Assembly (NCBI GenBank): GCA_020891255.1
Contig: BQFW01000005.1
Location: 1,364,001 to 1,428,000 of the forward strand
Direction: 5' to 3'
DNA from: Entomortierella parvispora E1425
Lineage: Eukaryota > Fungi > Mortierellomycota
Length of the DNA stretch: 64,000 bases
Below are positions 55,412-64,000 of this stretch, in pieces. The position numbers were made by a program, and so were the translations under genes. The notes under the pieces were generated by a model that saw only the letters and a program-made list of their open reading frames with translations, ran no database searches and was not told the origin of the DNA. The first letter of the stretch is position 1; every line of letters starts with the position of its first letter.

Positions 55412-58400
55412 AGACAAAGGAAAAAAGTAAGTCGCTACTTCCTCTTTCAAAAGTAAAACAAGAAAAGGGCATGGCAGCGAACAACTTACTTTTCCAAAAA
55501 GTCTGCGACTGCTAGATGGTCCTCCTGCAACCCCTTCATTCGCTGTGTCAAATTTTTAGCGTGTATCTTGTCGTTGTGCGATGTATTCATAGAGGAGGCC
55601 ATAGACTCGAGTGTAGCGACAACAGTCTTGAAGGTGAATGCCAACTCGGGACTCACGGGATCGAGCATTTGCTTCTCTAATTGCTCATGCAGAGTCTCAT
55701 CCTCATCCACTTTTGTGGATTTCAGTCGCCTGGCAGCTCTGCTATTACGCCCGGTCATCATATCCTGGTGTTCTTTCTTGGCTTGCGCATCTCGAACAAA
55801 AGACGCAATTGATGATGGTCCACTCGAGAGCAGATCTTTACGGAAAAAGAAGAGTCGACTGTAGTTGTTCAGGTACGCGTGAACAGAAATCTCGCTCTCG
55901 TACGAGTCCATCAAGCTATCGCTCCCATCTGTTGCTTGGAGGTCAATGGGTTGAAGAAGGATCTCCAACAGGCATTTTCTCCATCCGCCTAAAAGTCTGA
56001 GGTGCTTGTTCAACAGCTGAACCAGGGACTTGAACCGGTGCGACATCTTTGAAAGAATTGTACCCTCCATACCCAGTATCTGGGGCTCAGGCATGAGGCT
56101 CCCTCGGTCCAGAGAAACACTGTGCATGGCTTCCATGACAGGGCCAACGACCTGCTGGAACTTGACGACGGGGTCTGAAAGCATACTCTCACGGATCATC
56201 TCCGCTTTACGATTATACTCGGCTGCCTTGACGGCCATGCCGTGATCAGAGTATTGCGCTCCCATGAAGAACAAAATTCGATGATGCTGCTCAACCCAGT
56301 CGCGGTACCTGGCTCTTGGATTCTCAGACCCATCCTTGTCCTCCATGGCGCGGCCACGGCGAGTGGGTTGTAGAGACAGGCTGGCGAAGGGGAGGGCGGC
56401 TTCTGTGCCCTCATCTTGACTGAGGTCTAGACTTTGATCGACTTTGTGCTTCCAGAACTGGACCTTATCTGCGATGTCGTTCTCGACTTGTTCAAGGAGC
56501 TCTTGGGCCTGGATGATATCATCAGCGTGGGCGTGAAGGATGGCTCTCTTGATCTTGACGGCTAGCAGGGCGCGGTCTTTGGTGTTGATCTGACTGGACA
56601 CCTTTCGCAACATGACTCCCAGTACAGTGTCGATCGTGTGGATGTCTTTGTTGCCCAGGTTTCCCTTGGTCCATGCTCCGATTTGTGGGTGGCAGCTGTG
56701 CAGGTTGATCAAAGAGAAAAAAAAAGAGTGAGAATCTATTCAGTGCACCAACGACAGCTGCGAAAAGAATCTAGCACCTTGCAACCCATACCTCGTTTGG
56801 CGCAGTCGTTCCAACCAAAGCTGCATCTTGTCAAAGTCTACATCTCCATCGAGGTTGCACTCTTGGAGGCATTCTTCCCAGAGATCCATATAATGAGTTC
56901 GTTCAATGTCAGAAAATTGGATCCCATAGACCAGTCGATGTTGCTTCGGCAAGATCAACTCATGGGCAACATCACTCTTGGCATGCCGGTGCATGATACG
57001 CTGGTAAGAGGCAATGAGCAAGGGTCGGAATGGAGGCGAGATCAACAACTTCCAAAGTCGCTTTTGAGAAGCAAGTGGGTCTTGTCTCAAAAACTGCAGG
57101 AGGGAGTGTAGATCCTCAATGTGCCGCTTGATCGGAGTTCCACTGACAGCCCACGATATAACGCGAGGGATCATGAGCGTCATGGCTGCTGCCTGAGAGA
57201 CCGTTGTGCCCTCGATCAGCTGTGCCTGTATACAATACAAAACGATCTCGGATTAGAACTTTGACCCTCCAACTCCTTTGTGCAGATAGATCATATTCAA
57301 AAAAAAAAAAAAAAAAAAAAGAAAAAAAGAAAAAAGGGTTGCCTTACCTCGTCGAGGCACACACGCCACCAATGGATCTTGACAAAAGGACTCTGTCGAG
57401 GGACATAGAGTCTTTCGAATCGACGAGGCCGGTCATATTGCTGAGTGTAGTTGATCTCCTTTGCAAGAGCCGGATAGGTTGTAAGGACAATATCGTACGA
57501 AGCGAGTTCTTCTGCGCTGATCGACCTGTGCACTTCGTCCACGTAAAGAAACACTCGCAGAGTCGGGGCATGGTTCTCAATTTCGCTTGCCCACTGGTGC
57601 AGGATCGAAGGCGGAGTGATGATCAAAGTGGCAGAGCTGTAAATCAGACCCAGAGGGGCACTCGTGTCCGTGCCGTTCAGCACGATGGTCTTGTCCTCTT
57701 CGGGATTGCTAGCCTTTCGCTTGTGCAAGAGAATTAAGGCAAGCATCTCGACCGTCTTGCCAAGGCCCATCTCTTCGGCAAGAATACCTCCTCGTGGCCC
57801 TTGCTCAGCCGCGACCAGGTCGTCACACGCAAGGCAAATAGAGCCATCAAGTCGATTGATGAAAAGCTCTTTGCCGAGCACAGTAGTCACCTTCTCCCAT
57901 GTCAGTGGCAATCGCTCCATCGTGGTGGGAGTTCTATCATACACCTGCTGTTCTCCGTCCTCCCTGAAACCAGCTGACTCTCGAGATAGAAGCCAAGCAA
58001 CCGACTGGCGTTGGAAAGGGAGAAGTCGTGGCATGAGCTCCTCAGGTTGAACACCAGCAGGGAGGTCCACGCGAGAAGAATTGGGGTGCAGATTCGCGTA
58101 TAAATCGACGATGGCATCCTGAGAGTAATGACCCTTTTGCTGAGCAGGAAAAACCAGGTTGATGAGATCCTGTCTCTCTTGGCGGAAGGGGCCGGACAAG
58201 GACAAGTCCTTTGACAGCAAGTTCGAATGAAGGTATACATCAAACTGCAGGGAAACAGATCCCTGATGCCTGTCCAGTTGGAAGCGTGTCTTCAGAATAG
58301 CCTGATTTAACTTGGCATGGTAACCGAGTGCCTCAAAAAGGGCCACGCTGAATGAGGTGGACACGAGGCAGCCGGGAGGTGACTGATGGTCACTGGAGGA

Positions 58401-58811
58401 AGGCGAGATCATCGAGGCCAAAGTCTCGCCTTCCAGCTGGATGGACACGGATCCAACCTTAAGAACAGGGGTGGGCTTGAGGCTTTCAATGTATTCACTG
58501 TTGAGGTGGCCACAGGGAAGCAGGTCCTTGATACGTCCCAGGTATTCTTGAGATTGACGAACATGGATCCAGCCGTCACTCTCCATTGCGTTAACACTTG
58601 AATCGAATGAGTAGACTTTGTCTTGATCACCATGGCGCTTGATACCGATGACTCCATCAATGCGTCTTCTCTTGGACTCTGGACCAGTCAAATCAACCAC
58701 CAGAGCATCTCGGGCTCGCGCTGTTGTCCTTGGCTTGCGGTTATTCTGGCATGTTGGACAGGCAGTGGCCATCACTGGAGGGAAAAGAACCCAGGACGAG
58801 ATCAAAGTCAT
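53845..58811 (-). CDS. SHPRH: SNF2 helicase + RING E3 ligase (SHPRH/IRC20-like), about 6 exons
   Basis: GGILAEEMGLGKT, ATLII.PPSILHQW..EI, WWRVCLDE|AQ, WAVSGTPI, RING CLIC..CGHVFCEAC..CPSC, FSQW, helicase C motifs (QAVSRVHRIGQ). Confidence 0.92.
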
Positions 58812-58963
58812 GGTGAGAAAGGGGTTGGAGTGGGGGTGCAAGGTTGAATATCGAATGATGAGAATCAAAAAAAAAAAAAAATTCTGAAGCGCCAGACGCG
58901 TATATTTAAGGGGTGTATAGATTTTACTGTTGATTCCTGTATAGAGTTATGAACCTTACGTCT

Positions 58964-59047
58964 GAGAATGAACGTTGTGTCTGAAAACAGAATGGGTGGG
59001 ATGCCAGAGAATGAACGTTTGCCGAAAATAGAATGGGTGGGATGCCA
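58964..59047 (+). repeat. Imperfect direct repeat, 2 x about 42 bp
   Basis: gagaatgaacgtt....gaaaa.agaatgggtgggatgcca occurs twice in tandem. Confidence 0.9.
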
Positions 59048-59336
59048 GCGTTGCTCACAGACCACTTCCAAACCCTGGCTCAATCCAGCGACGAAGGACT
59101 AGCAGCTGGCCTGTGTGTGCTGTCTGTTGACACCGAAAAAACAGACAGAGGGATATAGCTTTGTAGCCATCTTGATAGTCGACTGGACTTGTTCAAGCTG
59201 TAAACAGTTGGGCTCGAACTTCACTTTACGCACTTTGCTCAATAAAACTCGCCTCACAGAAAAGACAAAAAGACGTTCAAAAAATCACCAGCTTTATTCT
59301 CTTCTTTTCTCTTCTTTCTTTCCTTCTCTCCTTTGC

Positions 59337-62300
59337 TCAAAGTTCACTCTCTAGCGCATCCTGAGCCTCGGCATGATGGCCCACAGGAAGCGCTGCCATG
59401 CAGCTGTGGTTGAAGTGGTAAGAGACATTGTCTACTCTCTTAATATCATCCCCCGAGATAGTTGTAAAAACAAACCTGCGACTATCGCGCTCGAGCTCTT
59501 CCTTGCAAGCACCGCAAACAGGCCGCTTCCCTTTCTTGCTGACAGAACAAACACTAAGACCAGCAGGGTAGTAGGTCTTCTTACTACGGCGGGTCTTGAG
59601 AGTGTCTTGAAAGGGTGGCAAAGTGACCTCTCCTCTTTGGCTTCGGCGAGTGCCAATCACCTTGGTTTCGCTACTGGCAGTACTCTTGGCCTTGCCATTA
59701 GCACTGACAGACGGAGAGCCCTTCTGAGGCTTGGCAGACTCCTTGCACGGATTGGTATCACTCCTGTCAACAGTACTGGTGCTATGTGATTCGGCATCTG
59801 CAGTTGGGCTGCCATTGCTTGAGCCCATCGAAACGACATCTTTTGCGATCAGCGACAAGTCCTCCTCCGGGTCTGGGCGCTCAATAATATACCAAACATG
59901 AATGATTCGGTAGCCAGGGGGATGAGTGACCGACTTGATTGGTACATTGCGGATGAGTCTTCCTCTTCTCGCTCCATCATACACAAATGCAACCGTACCA
60001 GCAAAGACCGTGCAACAGAAGTGCGTCCCGTTACTGTACATTATGGCTGCTCGCTTGTAATCCTTGAGGTTCATGGTCAGAAACGCCGGAGGTATACATG
60101 GTCCTGCTTCTCCATTGACTTCATAAGCGGATTGAAGGAAGTCGAGAACCAACATATAGGGATGGGTTGTCAAAGTTATCGGTCCTGTTGATTTTTCTCT
60201 CTCCTGCGCAGGCGTGCCAAAACTCAAGCCCTCCATCGACATTGATCAGCGACTCCACTCTTGTGTCCTCTCCGATCATCTCGGAATCACCCCCAGATGA
60301 TACGTCGACCTTGGTTGAACAAGTAAACTCAGTCTGACGAGTCCATGATTGGTCAAAAGAACTCTGGGTAATCCTCGCGCAGGCCGACATCACAACTGCT
60401 CTTGGGGTGAACATTTCGATCCGCTGTGGACATTCCAATCGGGTGCACTCCGTCGTTCTTACTGTCTCGAAACGCGTCAAACCAGGTAGAATATCAAGAA
60501 ATACCTCCTCCAAACTCTTGAAGAGGTCATGGTGCTGATCTCCAGCTAGCTCCATCGCCTCAGTGCACCACAGCTCTCGCGCGTAGTCGTACCGTGTGGC
60601 CCGGATCTCCTCCATAACTCGTAACAACGTTTGACCCGCATTTGATCTTGCGACGGCTGATGGGAGAGTCGCCCCAGAATGTTTTGATAGCAGGAACCAG
60701 GCCATCAAAGTTGTGTCGACAGGGCAACTGTTCTCGAATGTGAATCGATTCGCAACAGGCTCTTGTCTCCTCCATGGGATCCCAAAGGTATCCCAGTCGA
60801 TATCTCCGACAGATCTGATGGAGGGCAATACATTACGACTTCCTCTTGGCCGTCCTGCACCTCTGCCTTCGGTGTCCCTTCCTGTGTCCCTGGGTCCGAT
60901 GACACGCTTTCTTTTGGCACCCTTTGCTTTGGTGTTGGTTTCTTCGTCAAGAAGGGCCTTGGTGGTGTCCGGTGCTCGACCGTCATTGGTGTACTTGACA
61001 TTTACCAGTGGCTTTCTTGGCACGAAGCTGTCGTGTTGTGCCCGCAACTTCATCCCAGCAGTCTTCCTTCGATTTTTTGCACCTTCTCTGGATGATCGAG
61101 ACCTCTGTGTAGGATTTTCCTTCCTGCTGTCCTTGTAGCGAAGAACACCACCCTGACACACGAATTCGAAGTCCTCCATGAAGCTCTCTTGGTATCTGAC
61201 GATCGCTGAGACCCCTTGGATGATCGAGCAAGTTGGGTGCGTACGCTTGACGAATAACTTGAAGTCTCCTCCCAGACTCTCCTGGGCGTTGGTGTCTTTA
61301 CTGATTGTTTCCTTCGCTGCAACATCCCGAAGTGCAGGGAAAATAATCTTGGAACGATCTTGATGAAGGTAGAAGTCAAGCCAACGGCGGATCTTGGGAA
61401 ACCTCTCTAATAATCCGGCTACCATATTATCGAACTCGAAGCGGGTCACAGAGCTGGATGCAAGCATCATGGCGTCAACGTAGAAGTCCATCTCCTTTCC
61501 CGGTGGAATAATGGCGCCATTTTTGCGAATCCGGACTACCGATCGCTCGTAATGGACAATGCAGTAGCCAAAGTATCGCTCGAGAACGAAGTCTTCAGGA
61601 GCGATGTCAAAACGCTCAAGGACAGCGTCTTTGAATCCAATTCGCTCTGCATCTGCAAAGTCACAGGTCATCCCAGGAAAGTTTTCGTCGAAGTCGTCCC
61701 AGTCTCGATAATTAAGGACGTCGAATACGGCCAGGAAATGCTTCTTGTAGTGTTCGGAGGTCTTGCCAAGGTGGATCGTCATTGTTATCGGTACTGTCCG
61801 GTCAACAAAATCACTGAAGGCCGAGGTGACCGTAACGCAGATATCGGCGTAGTGGTCGTCCGTTACAATATCATGAATCGAATCCGTCGACAACGAAGAA
61901 TCCAGTGTCTGAGCGTGCTCTCGGATAAAGTCAATGACAATTGATATGTGTCCATCAAACGATGAAATACTTGAGGACACTACGAAGCAGGACCCGACCA
62001 CTTCCTCCAAAGCCGCTAGCGAACCAAGGTCGTTGGCGCTTCGATTCTTGTGTATGATCTTGTTCCGGAGGTGTCTCACATAGCTGAGATTGCGATATAC
62101 CATATACTTCCGGCTGATGGGGTCTCGCAACTCCGTCTTGTGGAGAAGGTGCTTGGGTCTGCTTTCAGGAGCCGTAGAAACAATCGTCTCCAGGTAATTC
62201 AACGCATCCTGCGACGCGCGCTTCGGGATTGGTGCCTGATGTGTATGGTAACCGCGATGGGTGAACTTGATGCATCCCCCTTCCTCGACCAAATCCAGGA

Positions 62301-62809
62301 CAGCTGTACATGGCAGATGTTCAAGCTCTCTCTCGTGGATAGCGCAAAATTGGCTCTCGGGTGTGTCCGACATGTCGATACGCGTTTCGCCTGTGACGTA
62401 ATCAACAGGTCCATTAACTTTTGGTCGCCGCACCCACCGACAGTCAGGAGCTGGGCATCGCAGAATACCAAGGCACTTTTTGTGGATTTTGATCATTGAC
62501 CCATCAGATTTGATATTGCGCCGGTAAACTTGAGTCGCCCAGCCTACACTCCGAGCGAGTAAAATGGTGTCATAGTCCTGGACATTGCGCTTAAACTTGA
62601 TGTTTCCATTTGGGAACTCGTCGCTTGACTCGAGGCTTCTACAATTCGTTTTTTTTAAAAAAAAAAAAAGTTAGCAGACAGACTATAGCCCCGAGAGGAA
62701 TGAGATGAGATGCAGTAGTATCCATACCCTCTGCTATTTTCTGAGGAAGCTGCCTCTCTCGAGGACTTTAGTTTCTGCTCGTCAGCAGGCGTAGCACCGA
62801 CATGCAGCC
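59337..62809 (-). CDS. Mutator-like transposase with GCM domain, AT-hook, USP-like protease and PARP-type zinc finger (one frameshift at about 60194)
   Basis: GCM: EFPNG..VGWA..KKCLGILRC..C..H.C..H.H.H. MULE: STDSIH, TCDFADAE, CIVH, TNAQES. AT-hook GRPRG. Protease: NSC, THF, YDG. Zinc finger: CGAC..YHFNHSC. An upstream exon at 62727-62809 splices in frame. Confidence 0.8.
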
Positions 62810-63026
62810 TAAAAAAGACAAGAATCTGAATAAATACCAGGGAACGTACGAGAACGACACAGAAAAAAGACGACAGGGATCAACATAAAACGTCATCAAG
62901 TGGCGAACATACCCAGCCTGACAGAAATTGTAGGTCTAGCATTTAAAACATAGGAGTATGGCGGTTAGGACCACTAGCAATCGATCCTCACCATGGCTTG
63001 GGATCAAGGAACTGTCGTCGACGTTC

Positions 63027-63057
<31 letters not shown>

Positions 63058-63143
63058 TACAGGTCATCTGGAATAACGATAGGGTTATTTGAGCTATAAA
63101 AGAAAGAGAGATTAGATCGAAAGAAAAAAGGAACACACCAAAG

Positions 63144-63940
63144 TCAATTGAACTTCTGATCATCATACCTGGAGCAGGGTTTTCTCACTTCATGACGAGA
63201 GCCGGGGTAATAACAGACAAACGGATCAGCAACTGGATGACCAGCAAAAGAGACGCCAGCAAGATGGCCAGCAAATGGGCCTGCAAGACCTGCATATGGA
63301 CCAGCATCAGGGTGTCCAACATATGGACCAGCAAATGGATGACCAGCAAATCGACGACCATCAAGTGGACCAGCAACAGGAAGCTTGGCAATCGGACCAA
63401 TAAAAGGGCCAGAAACAGGACGAGAAACAGGAAGCGGGCTATACACAGTAGAATACGTCAGCTTTCAGATATATGAAGGAAGGATGACAGTACTTATGGG
63501 ATGAAAGCCCTTACCCAGAATATGATCTTCTTAATCCATTAGGATGTAAGGTCATAGGTTTGGCCGCAGGAGTGGATGCCGTGTCAATTGCGAACTTGGT
63601 GCAAGTAGCAGGTTTGACAGATGCGACGACTCGGAGGGCAGGCGCCACAGGCGCTGCAATCAGGGGGGGTGGGCACCACAGGTGCGGCAATTGGGGGGGT
63701 AGGCACCACAGGCGCAGCAATCGGGGGGGTGGGCACCACAGGCGCGGTATTTACGGTCTTATCGAGCGCTGAAGGTGTGCTAAACGGGGAAACAGACCTG
63801 GCAACTGGGGAAATAGACCGCGCAATTGACGGGGAAATAGACCGCGCAATTGACGGGGCAGACACACAAGCTCCGGTCTTGGCAAGTGTAGCAGGTGCAG
63901 CAACTGGGGAGGGGGAGAGCCTTTTCGAAAACTTTGCCAC
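63144..63940 (-). other. Repeat-rich probable coding exons (Pro/Ala- and Gly/Pro/His-rich); possibly the 5' part of the MULE gene or a separate gene
   Basis: Tandem units APVVPTPPIA x3, SIARSISP x2-3 and FAGHP/YAG-like units; GT/AG sites are present but I could not close the phases. Confidence 0.4.
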
Positions 63941-64000
63941 AAGTCTAGACAGAAAAGAAAAGCGGGATCAAAGGCGAAATAATGAGTAAATTAGCAAGGA

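What the first reader, a model, noticed from the sequence alone, without database searches (positions are those of the whole stretch)
59337..62809. GCM-Mutator transposase apparently fused to a USP-like cysteine protease and a PARP-type zinc finger
Seen: the 60121-62496 ORF plus its in-frame upstream extension carries a GCM-like fold (EFPNG..GWA..KKCLGILRC...HRGYHTH), a complete MULE catalytic set (D in STDSIH, D in TCDF, CxxH, E in TNAQES) and an AT-hook (GRPRG). It then has a Cys box FENSCPVDTTL (Cys codon 60724-26) and finger-like C-x4-C and C...C pairs. The overlapping 59337-60242 ORF supplies ITLTTHPYMLVLDF, a His box SNGTHFCC (60021-23), YDG (Asp 59976-78) and a terminal CGAC-x29-H-x4-C finger. 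Removing one A from the A5 run at about 60194 joins them (WHACAGERKSTGPITL). Known: GCM belongs to the WRKY/GCM1 family linked to MULEs, and MULEs carrying Ulp1/C48 SUMO proteases are described. Inference: this is a single polypeptide combining transposase, a C19/USP-like deubiquitinase with an intact-looking triad, and a DNA-break-sensing finger. It could be a transposon that edits host ubiquitin marks at its own cut sites, or a domesticated chromatin factor. I am not aware of this architecture being described.
Basis: partly seen in the sequence, partly recalled or inferred. Interest (0 to 1): 0.85.

Follow-up and report, generated by a model that had tools for sequence, protein, structure and literature searches.

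The report
Jumping gene carrying a deubiquitinase-like domain
This is the right-hand half of a young, transcribed Mutator-type jumping gene in a soil fungus; I found no paper noting that its cutting enzyme is fused to a ubiquitin-protease-like domain and a DNA-break-type zinc finger.

Summary

The locus is the 3' 5.1 kb of a 9.36-kb DNA transposon of Entomortierella parvispora. It has ~85-bp terminal inverted repeats, 9-bp target duplications, and at least three copies that are 99.4-99.9% identical.

All four domain calls passed tests:
- **GCM domain:** family profile against mouse GCM1, E=2.6e-11.
- **Transposase:** IS256/Mutator-type DDE fold, with invariant D, D, CxxH and E.
- **USP fold:** Z=16, all top 50 PDB hits are USPs. 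Cys/His/Asp are kept in 26/27, 34/34 and 32/33 relatives.
- **PARP-type finger:** E=8.9e-6 to PARP1.

Homologues at 33-55% identity encode one continuous protein. A spliced RNA contig from the same strain carries A4 and gives an open 1126-codon frame. The +1 break is therefore copy-specific or a Nanopore homopolymer error.

It is a transposon, not a domesticated gene. GCM plus DDE is the published "MuDRF" clade (2011). I found no description of the USP and PARP-finger module, although it is widespread. First readers of this scan flagged the same architecture on other DNA of this genome, without follow-up. Enzyme activity and target are untested.

The parts
58911..58993 (.). Right (3') terminal inverted repeat of the transposon. 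The element ends at about 58909-58911 with GGGTGTATAGATTTTACTGTTGATT...
   Evidence: blastn against the two paralogous copies stops at 58911, and this stretch matches their left ends in inverted orientation. Termini are aligned. The TIR core occurs once in the window against 0 expected. DNA contigs of run X2 show this stretch at 394-626x against 72x for the flank.
58994..59336 (-). 3' untranslated and subterminal region of the element
   Evidence: About 99% identical to L001 and L002. Lies downstream of the stop codon at 59337-59339.
59400..59516 (-). PARP-type zinc finger core (C-x2-C ... H-x4-C) at the C-terminus
   Evidence: G24, C29, C32 and H62 are invariant; V20, P27 and C67 are at least 90% conserved in 22 homologues. 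The profile hits PARP1 zinc fingers at E=8.9e-6. pLDDT is above 90 in the model of P0004.
59601..59880 (-). Variable, low-complexity linker between the USP-like domain and the finger
   Evidence: Unalignable among homologues. pLDDT is about 40 in the equivalent stretch of the P0004 model.
59881..60810 (-). USP-fold (peptidase C19-like) domain: Cys box 60724-60726, four finger cysteines, His 60021-60023, Asp 59976-59978. It is interrupted in this copy by one extra A at 60192-60196.
   Evidence: All top 50 Foldseek PDB hits are USPs, best 1.8e-10. VIA Z is 14.4-16.4 over 211-247 residues. The HMM hit to USP46 aligns the Cys and His boxes.
60192..60196 (-). A5 run that breaks the frame. It is A4 in the two paralogues and in the RNA contig.
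   Evidence: Three-copy alignment. The X1 contig leaves one letter out at 60192. The A4 form gives 1126 codons with no stop.
60811..60978 (-). Conserved linker with an AT-hook-like GRPxGSRN motif and an NDGRAPDTT motif
   Evidence: Conserved in 6 of 7 homologues. Not tested further.
60979..62190 (-). Mutator/IS256-type DDE transposase domain (D 61882-61884, D 61660-61662, CxxH 61552-61563, E 61279-61281)
   Evidence: D252, D326, C359, H362 and E453 are invariant in 33 sequences. The model has pLDDT 87. Best PDB hit is the ISCth4 transposase, E=1.7e-6.
62191..62638 (-). GCM-type zinc DNA-binding domain (EFPNG..GWA..KKCLG..C..HRGYHTH)
   Evidence: The profile hits mouse GCM1 1odh_A at E=2.6e-11 over GCM residues 33-169. 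Foldseek to 1odh_A gives E=4.4e-5, TM 0.52 by target.
62639..62727 (-). 89-nt spliceosomal intron (GT..AG)
   Evidence: GTATGG...CTAAC...TAG can be read in the sequence. X1 contig record 3 joins 62728 directly to 62638.
62728..62807 (-). Short coding exon (..LHVGATPADEQKLKSSREAASSENSRG)
   Evidence: Open and in frame with the next exon after splicing. Present in gene models P0001 and P0008 and conserved in P0003.
62808..62911 (-). 104-nt intron
   Evidence: Joint 62807|62912 in run X1, with ends CT..AC on the plus strand, which is GT..AG on the minus strand.
62912..64000 (-). Upstream exons of the same gene: a Pro/Ala-rich, repeat-bearing N-terminal region. The gene and the element continue about 4.2 kb beyond the window end. 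This copy has a 172-bp deletion at 62916/62917.
   Evidence: Gene models P0001 and P0008. The alignment to L001/L002 runs to the window edge.

Best explanation
The finding is the 3' half of an autonomous, recently active Mutator-superfamily DNA transposon of the GCM-bearing 'MuDRF' clade in Entomortierella parvispora.

**Shown:**
- The element is 9.36 kb with ~85-bp TIRs and 9-bp TSDs.
- Its main gene is spliced and transcribed.
- The gene encodes one long protein, in this order: low-complexity N-terminus, GCM zinc DNA-binding domain, DDE transposase with CxxH, AT-hook-like linker, USP-fold domain, PARP-type zinc finger.
- The putative Cys/His/Asp triad and four finger cysteines of the USP-fold domain are conserved across the family.

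**Inferred:**
- The GCM domain recognises the element's ends and the DDE domain cuts and pastes (likely, by analogy with other MULEs).
- The USP domain is an active ubiquitin or ubiquitin-like isopeptidase (about 0.6).
- The finger holds it at nicks, gaps or ends made during excision and insertion. There it would remove a ubiquitin-type mark from chromatin, a repair factor or the transposase itself, to protect the transposase or steer repair or silencing (about 0.3).

The +1 frame break in the window copy is either a Nanopore homopolymer error left in a repeat or a private mutation of this copy. It is not part of the design.

The confidence given (0.8) is for the shown core: a MuDRF transposon whose transposase is fused to a USP-fold domain and a PARP-type finger. 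The inferred steps carry the lower odds stated above.
For: **Transposon identity**
- Three loci share the sequence at 99.4-99.9% identity.
- The TIRs are about 74-88 bp.
- The 9-bp TSD ATATTAAAC is perfect in L001 and matches 8 of 9 in L002.
- A related 5.17-kb Linnemannia element has 76-bp TIRs and the 9-bp TSD AAAAAAAGA.

**Domains**
- GCM: E=2.6e-11 to 1odh_A.
- DDE: ISCth4 at E=1.7e-6, and invariant D, D, CxxH, E.
- USP fold: Z=16.4, all top hits are USPs.
- USP boxes: USP46 HMM alignment of NTC with NTC, HF with HY and YD with FD.
- USP topology: in the model, Cys24 opens helix 24-39 and His256/Asp271 flank the hairpin 257-270.
- USP conservation: C 26/27, H 34/34, D 32/33.
- Finger: PARP1 at E=8.9e-6.

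**Fusion is ancestral**
- P0003 to P0006 are continuous proteins.
- 12 of the 156 sequences held show all five parts, and many more show adjacent parts.
- A distant member, P0186, has a Pfam-significant UCH domain (54.4 bits against a 23.9 cutoff) in the same position, plus Ulp1 and the same terminal finger.

**Expression**
- X1 contigs lack both introns and carry A4.
- That form is an open 1126-codon frame colinear with P0004.
- The strain's RNA-seq and its Nanopore assembly are described in PMC8759367.
Against: - No single sequence of the close family reaches any Pfam threshold for MULE, UCH, GCM or zf-PARP.
- The USP call therefore rests on a predicted structure of a 55%-identical homologue (P0004), not of the window's own broken protein.
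- I could not read the model's coordinates, so co-location of Cys, His and Asp is inferred from topology and alignment, not measured.
- By inspection, the Asn that forms the oxyanion hole five residues before the catalytic Cys in canonical USPs is not conserved here.
- The His-to-Cys spacing of the finger is x4 in this copy rather than the PARP x2.
- hhalign of the family profile against P0186's canonical UCH domain found nothing. The two USP modules may have been acquired independently.
- The RNA contig is a mosaic of window-type and L001-type SNPs. It may be a de Bruijn chimera of several copies.
- The DNA contigs did not cover 60196, so A5 in this particular copy is neither confirmed nor refuted.
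- Activity, substrate and DNA-break binding are wholly untested.
Confidence: 0.8

Rival explanations
1. The USP-fold domain is a self-processing protease. It would cut the long polyprotein into a transposase and a C-terminal product, as Babu et al. proposed for the OTU domain fused to Medicago MULE transposases.
For: There is a published precedent for the idea (PMC1702500). A conserved triad is compatible with any cysteine-protease role. Long disordered linkers flank the domain.
Against: USPs cleave after the C-terminal Gly-Gly of a folded ubiquitin-like domain. No beta-grasp domain and no conserved LRGG-type site is seen between the DDE and USP parts in the alignment or the models. The terminal DNA-break-type finger stays attached to the USP domain in all relatives, which fits a role on DNA better than a role in maturation.
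Confidence: 0.12
2. The USP-fold domain is a non-catalytic ubiquitin- or SUMO-binding module (a pseudo-enzyme). It would dock the transposase on modified chromatin or repair factors.
For: The family is too divergent for Pfam UCH. The canonical oxyanion Asn and the QQDAxEF-type motif are not evident by inspection. Catalytically inactive USP-fold proteins exist (own knowledge).
Against: Cys is kept in 26/27, His in 34/34 and Asp in 32/33 homologues that are otherwise only 14-30% identical. That pattern is hard to explain without catalysis.
Confidence: 0.15
3. The locus is a domesticated, host-serving chromatin factor derived from a transposase.
For: It is a long conserved ORF with DNA-binding, ubiquitin-related and DNA-break-related domains. 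It is transcribed and spliced.
Against: It lies inside a 9.36-kb unit bounded by TIRs and 9-bp TSDs. That unit is present at three or more unrelated loci at 99.4-99.9% identity, with different flanks. The DDE residues are invariant. Relatives in Linnemannia are also TIR- and TSD-bounded.
Confidence: 0.02
4. The two ORFs are meant to be separate. The A5 run would be a programmed frameshift or slippage site that sets the ratio of transposase-only to full-length protein.
For: The break lies in a homopolymer inside the USP domain. Homopolymer slippage is used by some mobile elements (own knowledge).
Against: The two paralogues and the RNA contig have A4 and need no frameshift. All homologues are continuous. 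The break falls in the middle of the USP fold, not between domains. All small indels among the copies sit in homopolymer or dinucleotide runs of a Nanopore assembly.
Confidence: 0.03

Closest known systems
MuDRF elements (Repbase MuDRF-1_PSt etc.; Cantu et al. 2011, PMC3164196)
   Same: A distant MuDR/MULE branch with one protein carrying a GCM DNA-binding domain followed by a DDE transposase, and 9-bp TSDs. It was reported in Basidiomycota and Naegleria. The window element has all these features.
   Different: The paper mentions only GCM and DDE; the word 'ubiquitin' does not occur in it. Here the C-terminal 500 residues are shown to be a USP fold plus a PARP-type finger. AlphaFold DB 'GCM domain-containing' proteins share that C-terminal fold. 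The host is a Mortierellomycete. This element is 9.4 kb and has a second small gene.
MULEs and other DNA transposons carrying Ulp1/C48 or OTU peptidases (KAONASHI-type MULEs from own knowledge; Medicago OTU-MULE fusion, Babu et al. 2006, PMC1702500)
   Same: A papain-like ubiquitin/Ubl peptidase is encoded by, or fused C-terminally to, a WRKY-GCM1-type MULE transposase. One distant relative here (P0186) even carries both UCH and Ulp1 domains.
   Different: The peptidase class here is USP (C19), not C48 or OTU. It is coupled to a PARP-type zinc finger. I found no paper describing a USP in a MULE.
Cellular USP deubiquitinases (USP35, USP30, CYLD, USP1, USP46, USP7) and the SUMO-specific USPL1
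   Same: The fold matches over about 240 residues (Z 14-16). The catalytic Cys sits at a helix N-terminus, His and Asp sit on a beta-hairpin, and the finger subdomain has four Cys.
   Different: Identity is only 9-16%, below the Pfam UCH threshold. The canonical oxyanion Asn and the QQD box are not evident. The domain sits in a transposase. Specificity (Ub, SUMO or another Ubl) cannot be read from the fold, because USPL1 and USP18 score as well as true DUBs.
PARP-type zinc fingers (PARP1 F1/F2; DNA ligase III from own knowledge)
   Same: A G..P.C..C...I.R...R...W..YH..C pattern with a C-x2-C ... H ... C ligand set, and a profile match to both PARP1 fingers.
   Different: A single finger at the extreme C-terminus of a transposase. 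The His-Cys spacing is x4 in this subfamily and x2 in others. There is no Pfam zf-PARP hit. DNA-break binding is untested.

Membership tests
Mutator/MULE superfamily, MuDRF clade | DDE catalytic triad with the CxxH motif on an RNase H-like fold of IS256/Mutator type | tested here: met
   D252, D326, C359, H362 and E453 are invariant in 33 sequences. Best PDB fold hit is the ISCth4 (IS256-family) transposase at E=1.7e-6.
Mutator/MULE superfamily, MuDRF clade | Terminal inverted repeats bounding the element | tested here: met
   74-88 bp TIRs in L001 and L002, with the right TIR in the window at 58911-58993. The left end of the window copy lies beyond the window.
Mutator/MULE superfamily, MuDRF clade | 9-bp target-site duplication | tested here: met
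   ATATTAAAC is perfect in L001; L002 matches 8 of 9. AAAAAAAGA in the Linnemannia relative. Not testable for the window copy, whose 5' end is off the window.
Mutator/MULE superfamily, MuDRF clade | GCM DNA-binding domain N-terminal to the transposase domain | tested here: met
   Profile against 1odh_A gives E=2.6e-11 over nearly the whole GCM domain. Foldseek gives E=4.4e-5.
Mutator/MULE superfamily, MuDRF clade | Match to the Pfam MULE / Transposase_mut models | tested here: not met
   No Pfam hit for the window ORFs or for six homologues. The 2011 paper also needed four PSI-BLAST iterations to link MuDRF to MuDR. This reflects divergence and does not exclude membership.
USP / peptidase C19 | USP catalytic-domain fold | tested here: met
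   All top 50 Foldseek PDB hits are USPs, best 1.8e-10. VIA Z is 14.4-16.4, rmsd 3.4-4.7 A, 211-247 residues aligned. The model is of homologue P0004, pLDDT above 90 in the domain.
USP / peptidase C19 | Cys box with the catalytic Cys at a helix N-terminus; His box and Asp on the following hairpin | tested here: met
   The NTC, HF and YD motifs align with those of USP46. Conserved 26/27, 34/34 and 32/33. Helix 24-39 starts at the Cys; strands 257-263 and 266-270 are flanked by the His and the Asp. Inter-residue distances could not be measured.
USP / peptidase C19 | Pfam PF00443 above the gathering score | tested here: not met
   No hit for the window or close homologues. It is met only in the distant family member P0186, at 54.4 bits against a 23.9 cutoff.
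USP / peptidase C19 | Oxyanion-hole Asn about five residues before the catalytic Cys | tested here: inconclusive
   By inspection of the alignment, the residue at C-5 is T or R. The conserved Asn is at C-2. A structural equivalent may exist but could not be checked.
USP / peptidase C19 | Isopeptidase activity on ubiquitin or a Ubl | not testable with these tools
   Needs a probe or AMC assay.
PARP-type zinc finger (zf-PARP) | C-x2-C ... H-x2-C zinc ligands with the conserved G/K..C..C...I..G..R and W.H..C context | tested here: inconclusive
   The ligands and the context are conserved and the profile hits PARP1 F1 and F2 at E=8.9e-6. However, the His-Cys spacing is x4 in this subfamily (x2 in P0019, P0022 and P0025), and Pfam zf-PARP does not hit.
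PARP-type zinc finger (zf-PARP) | Binding to DNA nicks, gaps or ends | not testable with these tools
   Needs EMSA or fluorescence anisotropy with nicked, gapped and intact duplexes.
Domesticated transposase gene | Single copy, no TIRs or TSD, conserved synteny | tested here: not met
   Three or more near-identical TIR/TSD-bounded copies at unrelated loci.

The most novel reading that the evidence does not exclude
MuDRF transposases, spread across fungi, plasmodiophorids and several animal groups, would carry a DNA-break-targeted USP-class isopeptidase. The PARP-type finger would park the enzyme on the gaps or ends made by transposition. There it would erase a ubiquitin-type mark on a histone, PCNA, a repair factor or the transposase. 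That would block ubiquitin-dependent silencing or damage signalling and steer repair in the element's favour. It would be the first USP-class counter-defence or repair-steering module of a cut-and-paste transposon.
Probability: 0.3. Interest if true: 0.8.

Novelty: new variant of a known kind. Interest (0 to 1): 0.6.

Why it matters
Transposons are known to carry Ulp1 (SUMO-protease-like) and OTU peptidases, but nobody knows what these do for the element. Here a third class, a USP, is fused in one chain to the transposase and to a finger type known from DNA-break sensors. Its catalytic residues are conserved in a family of over 1,500 database representatives, and it is transcribed in a culturable fungus.

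That gives a concrete, testable handle on how a cut-and-paste element might interfere with ubiquitin-type signalling at its own breaks. It also adds about 500 residues of annotation to the MuDRF clade, which has been described only as 'GCM + DDE' since 2011.

The family also shows that full GCM domains, best known from animal developmental transcription factors, are widespread on mobile elements outside animals.

Tried and rejected
- **Pfam scans:** scans of the window ORFs, six homologues, the N-terminal region and the second small ORF gave nothing.
- **PDB sequence searches:** a single-sequence search with the 301-aa ORF and a search with the whole-length profile A1 found nothing meaningful. 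Only domain-level profiles worked.
- **hhalign:** the family's C-terminal profile against P0186's canonical UCH domain gave no alignment.
- **TIRs in L003:** an inverted-repeat search in the metagenomic contig found none, probably because the contig ends 418 bp after the gene.
- **Bacterial-type scans:** the promoter and terminator scan of the 3' region was empty and does not apply to a fungus.
- **Literature:** searches for MULE or transposase together with USP, UCH, C19 or deubiquitinase returned no relevant paper. Dupeyron 2019 and Muszewska 2017 do not mention it.
- **DNA reads at 60196:** the run X2 contigs did not cover the element body, so A5 against A4 in this particular copy is unresolved.
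- **Rejected readings:** a small intron at the A5 site (no GT..AG of usable length), programmed frameshifting, and a domesticated gene.
Full report
**1. What is in the sequence**

On the minus strand there is a 791-aa ORF (60121-62496) and an overlapping 301-aa ORF (59337-60242). The first ORF stays open for 47 more codons, up to 62637. There it meets a typical fungal intron, GTATGG...CTAAC...TAG, at 62727-62639. The frame changes in a run of five A at 60192-60196. No Pfam model matches either ORF.

**2. Organism and copies**

Protein search gave 100% matches to Entomortierella parvispora gene models. P0001 (EMPS_03911) is the model of this locus; it bridges the frame break with an invented intron. 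P0002 and P0008 are models at two other loci.

blastn and a three-way alignment show a 9.36-kb unit, at L001 3520-12871 and L002 7079-16432, that is 99.9% identical between those loci and about 99.4% identical to the window. The unit has the following boundaries:
- It ends in inverted repeats of about 74-88 bp that start GGGT..GATTTTACTGTTGATT.
- It is flanked by a perfect 9-bp duplication, ATATTAAAC, in L001.
- It is flanked by an 8-of-9 duplication in L002.

The window holds only the right 5.1 kb. The element ends at about 58911, some 40 bp from the neighbouring SNF2-type gene, and its left end lies about 4.2 kb beyond position 64000. DNA contigs of the same strain show the TIR at 394-626x against 72x for the unique flank. 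That means roughly 6-9 TIR copies in the genome.

**3. The frame break**

The window has A5 where both paralogues have A4. The paralogues carry other small indels where the window is in frame: -2 at 62333-4, +1 at 61811 and +1 at 59922. L002 also has +1 at 61016. Every one of these indels sits in a homopolymer or a GA run.

The genome was assembled from Nanopore reads and polished with Nanopolish and Pilon; RNA-seq of the same strain exists (PMC8759367). Laying public runs on 58850-63000 gave these results for run X1:
- A 2,928-nt contig joins 62728 directly to 62638, so the 89-nt intron is removed.
- Another contig joins 62912 to 62807, so a 104-nt GT..AG intron is removed. X1 is therefore RNA, whatever its label.
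- The long contig leaves out one letter at 60192 and has no other gap.
- A second contig covers 59327-59815 without gaps.

I applied exactly those differences to the window sequence. The result is an open frame of 1126 codons with no stop, colinear with the intact homologue P0004 over 1097 columns at 54.6% identity. An uninterrupted message is therefore expressed. Whether this particular copy really has A5 could not be settled, because the DNA contigs did not cover the site.

**4. The fusion is ancestral**

Metagenomic homologues P0003 to P0006 (33-55% identity to the joined protein; 36-58% to the 838-aa piece) read straight through the junction and end with the same finger. An exhaustive profile search found 1,576 representatives at E<=1e-3 and 256 at E<=1e-30.

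I scored the 156 sequences held with sub-profiles. Twelve have all five parts (GCM, DDE, linker, USP-like, finger) and many fragments have adjacent parts. E. parvispora also has a second, divergent family of the same kind (the P0010 cluster). A Linnemannia elongata relative is a 5.17-kb element with 76-bp TIRs and a 9-bp TSD.

**5. Domain tests**

*N-terminal part.* A 33-sequence alignment has invariant zinc ligands and invariant D252, D326, C359, H362 and E453. Its profile hits the mouse GCM1 DNA-binding domain (1odh_A) at E=2.6e-11 over GCM residues 33-169. The AlphaFold model of the window's own residues (60979-62637, pLDDT 87.3) finds two things in the PDB:
- the ISCth4 transposase, an IS256-family protein and the bacterial branch of the Mutator superfamily, at E=1.7e-6;
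- the GCM domain, at E=4.4e-5.

*C-terminal part, conservation.* A 35-sequence alignment keeps the following:

| Feature | Conserved in |
|---|---|
| N-T-C Cys box, the Cys | 26/27 |
| Four finger cysteines | 32-34 of 32-35 each |
| H-F | 34/34 and 32/33 |
| Y-D-G, the Asp | 32/33 |

*C-terminal part, fold.* The model of P0004:600-1062 has pLDDT 84, and above 90 in the domain. Its Foldseek PDB hits are all USPs among the top 50, best USP18 at 1.8e-10. On re-alignment, Z is 14.4-16.4 over 211-247 residues to USP35, USP30, CYLD, USP1, USPL1, USP46 and USP7. The family profile hits USP46 at E=0.001 and aligns NTC with NTC, HF with HY and YD with FD. In the model the Cys opens helix 24-39, and the His and Asp flank the hairpin 257-270. 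That is the papain/USP topology.

*Finger.* The 22-sequence profile hits PARP1 fingers F1 and F2 at E=8.9e-6.

*A distant member.* P0186 has the family's GCM and DDE domains (E=5.8e-31 and 8e-102). A Pfam-significant UCH domain (54.4 bits) sits in the same position, followed by a Ulp1 domain and then the same terminal finger.

**6. What is known**

Babu et al. 2006 described WRKY-GCM1 domains on MULE transposases and an OTU peptidase fusion in Medicago.

Cantu et al. 2011 named 'MuDRF', a distant MuDR branch. Its single protein has a GCM domain and a DDE domain, it makes 9-bp TSDs, and it occurs in Basidiomycota and Naegleria. No other paper in the library uses the name, and that paper never mentions ubiquitin. 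The element here fits MuDRF on every defining feature.

AlphaFold DB clusters named 'GCM domain-containing protein' share the C-terminal fold (E down to 2.8e-28). So do uncharacterised proteins that I believe, from accession memory only, are from rust fungi, plasmodiophorids, a sea anemone, aphids and a rotifer. The USP module therefore looks like a general feature of the clade that has been overlooked. Four literature searches for a USP, UCH or C19 domain in a MULE or DNA transposon found nothing.

**7. How it most likely works**

Shown: the architecture, the element's ends, its copy number, its splicing and its expression.

Inferred from family knowledge: the GCM domain binds the element's ends and the DDE domain performs cut-and-paste with 9-bp staggered insertion.

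Inferred from conservation: the USP domain is catalytically active (about 0.6). The fold cannot tell its substrate class, because the SUMO-specific USPL1 and the ISG15-specific USP18 match as well as true deubiquitinases.

Speculative (about 0.3): the PARP-type finger holds the enzyme at transposition-induced breaks or gaps, where it removes a ubiquitin-type mark.

Rivals are self-processing (0.12; no ubiquitin-like domain or Gly-Gly site is seen upstream), a non-catalytic binding module (0.15; the conserved triad argues against it), programmed frameshifting (0.03) and a domesticated gene (0.02).

**8. Verdict**

The element is a new member of a known clade, MuDRF. The USP plus PARP-finger module is, as far as I could find, an undescribed variant of the known theme of transposon-encoded ubiquitin/Ubl peptidases.

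First readers of this scan flagged the same architecture on other pieces of this genome. Those notes are unchecked and are not independent evidence.

Noticed in passing
window 62916/62917: This copy lacks 172 bp that both paralogues have (L001 8698-8869). The missing stretch lies in the N-terminal low-complexity region of the gene. An RNA joint (62807|62912) extends across the deletion point, which suggests that a copy with this deletion is itself transcribed, at lower depth (5.2 against 26.6).
   Followed up: partly
L001 5140-5941; L002 8700-9503 (off the window, in the left half of the element): All full copies carry a second small gene (called at 239 aa) upstream of the transposase gene and on the same strand. 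It has no Pfam match and its role is unknown.
   Followed up: partly
P0186 (ENA metagenome protein, 1695 aa): A distant family member carries both a canonical Pfam UCH domain and a Ulp1/C48 domain between the DDE domain and the PARP-type finger. That is two different Ub/Ubl peptidase classes in one transposase.
   Followed up: partly
P0010 cluster (EMPS_02890, EMPS_02970, EMPS_11582, EMPS_04051): The same genome holds a second, divergent family (about 41% identity) with the same GCM-DDE-USP-like architecture.
   Followed up: no
P0026 (Spongospora subterranea), P0180 (MMETSP transcript): Relatives at 45% identity in the DDE region occur in a plasmodiophorid, and another occurs in a marine protist transcriptome. 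The patchy cross-kingdom spread may reflect horizontal transfer of the element.
   Followed up: no
window 58850-58993, runs X3 and X4: Runs from other samples with the same species label hold the TIR at depths of 136-486x but almost none of the element body (word share 0.07 and 0.00). This suggests non-autonomous derivatives or divergent elements that share the ends.
   Followed up: no
window 57297-58868 (-): The element's right end lies about 40 bp from the start of an SNF2-family helicase-like ORF (GGILAEEMGLGKT motif, RAD5/RAD16-like by inspection). The insertion is therefore in that gene's 5' region, as is common for MULEs.
   Followed up: no
window 59795-59867: A 73-nt piece of the linker region, with 3 differences, is shared with a different expressed and genomic sequence. 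Contigs X1 record 4 and X2 record 12 run on into unrelated sequence after it.
   Followed up: no
window 63584-63940 (-): There are tandem PVVPTPPIAA-type and SISP/VARSVSP-type repeats in the N-terminal region of the transposase gene. The repeat number differs between copies.
   Followed up: no
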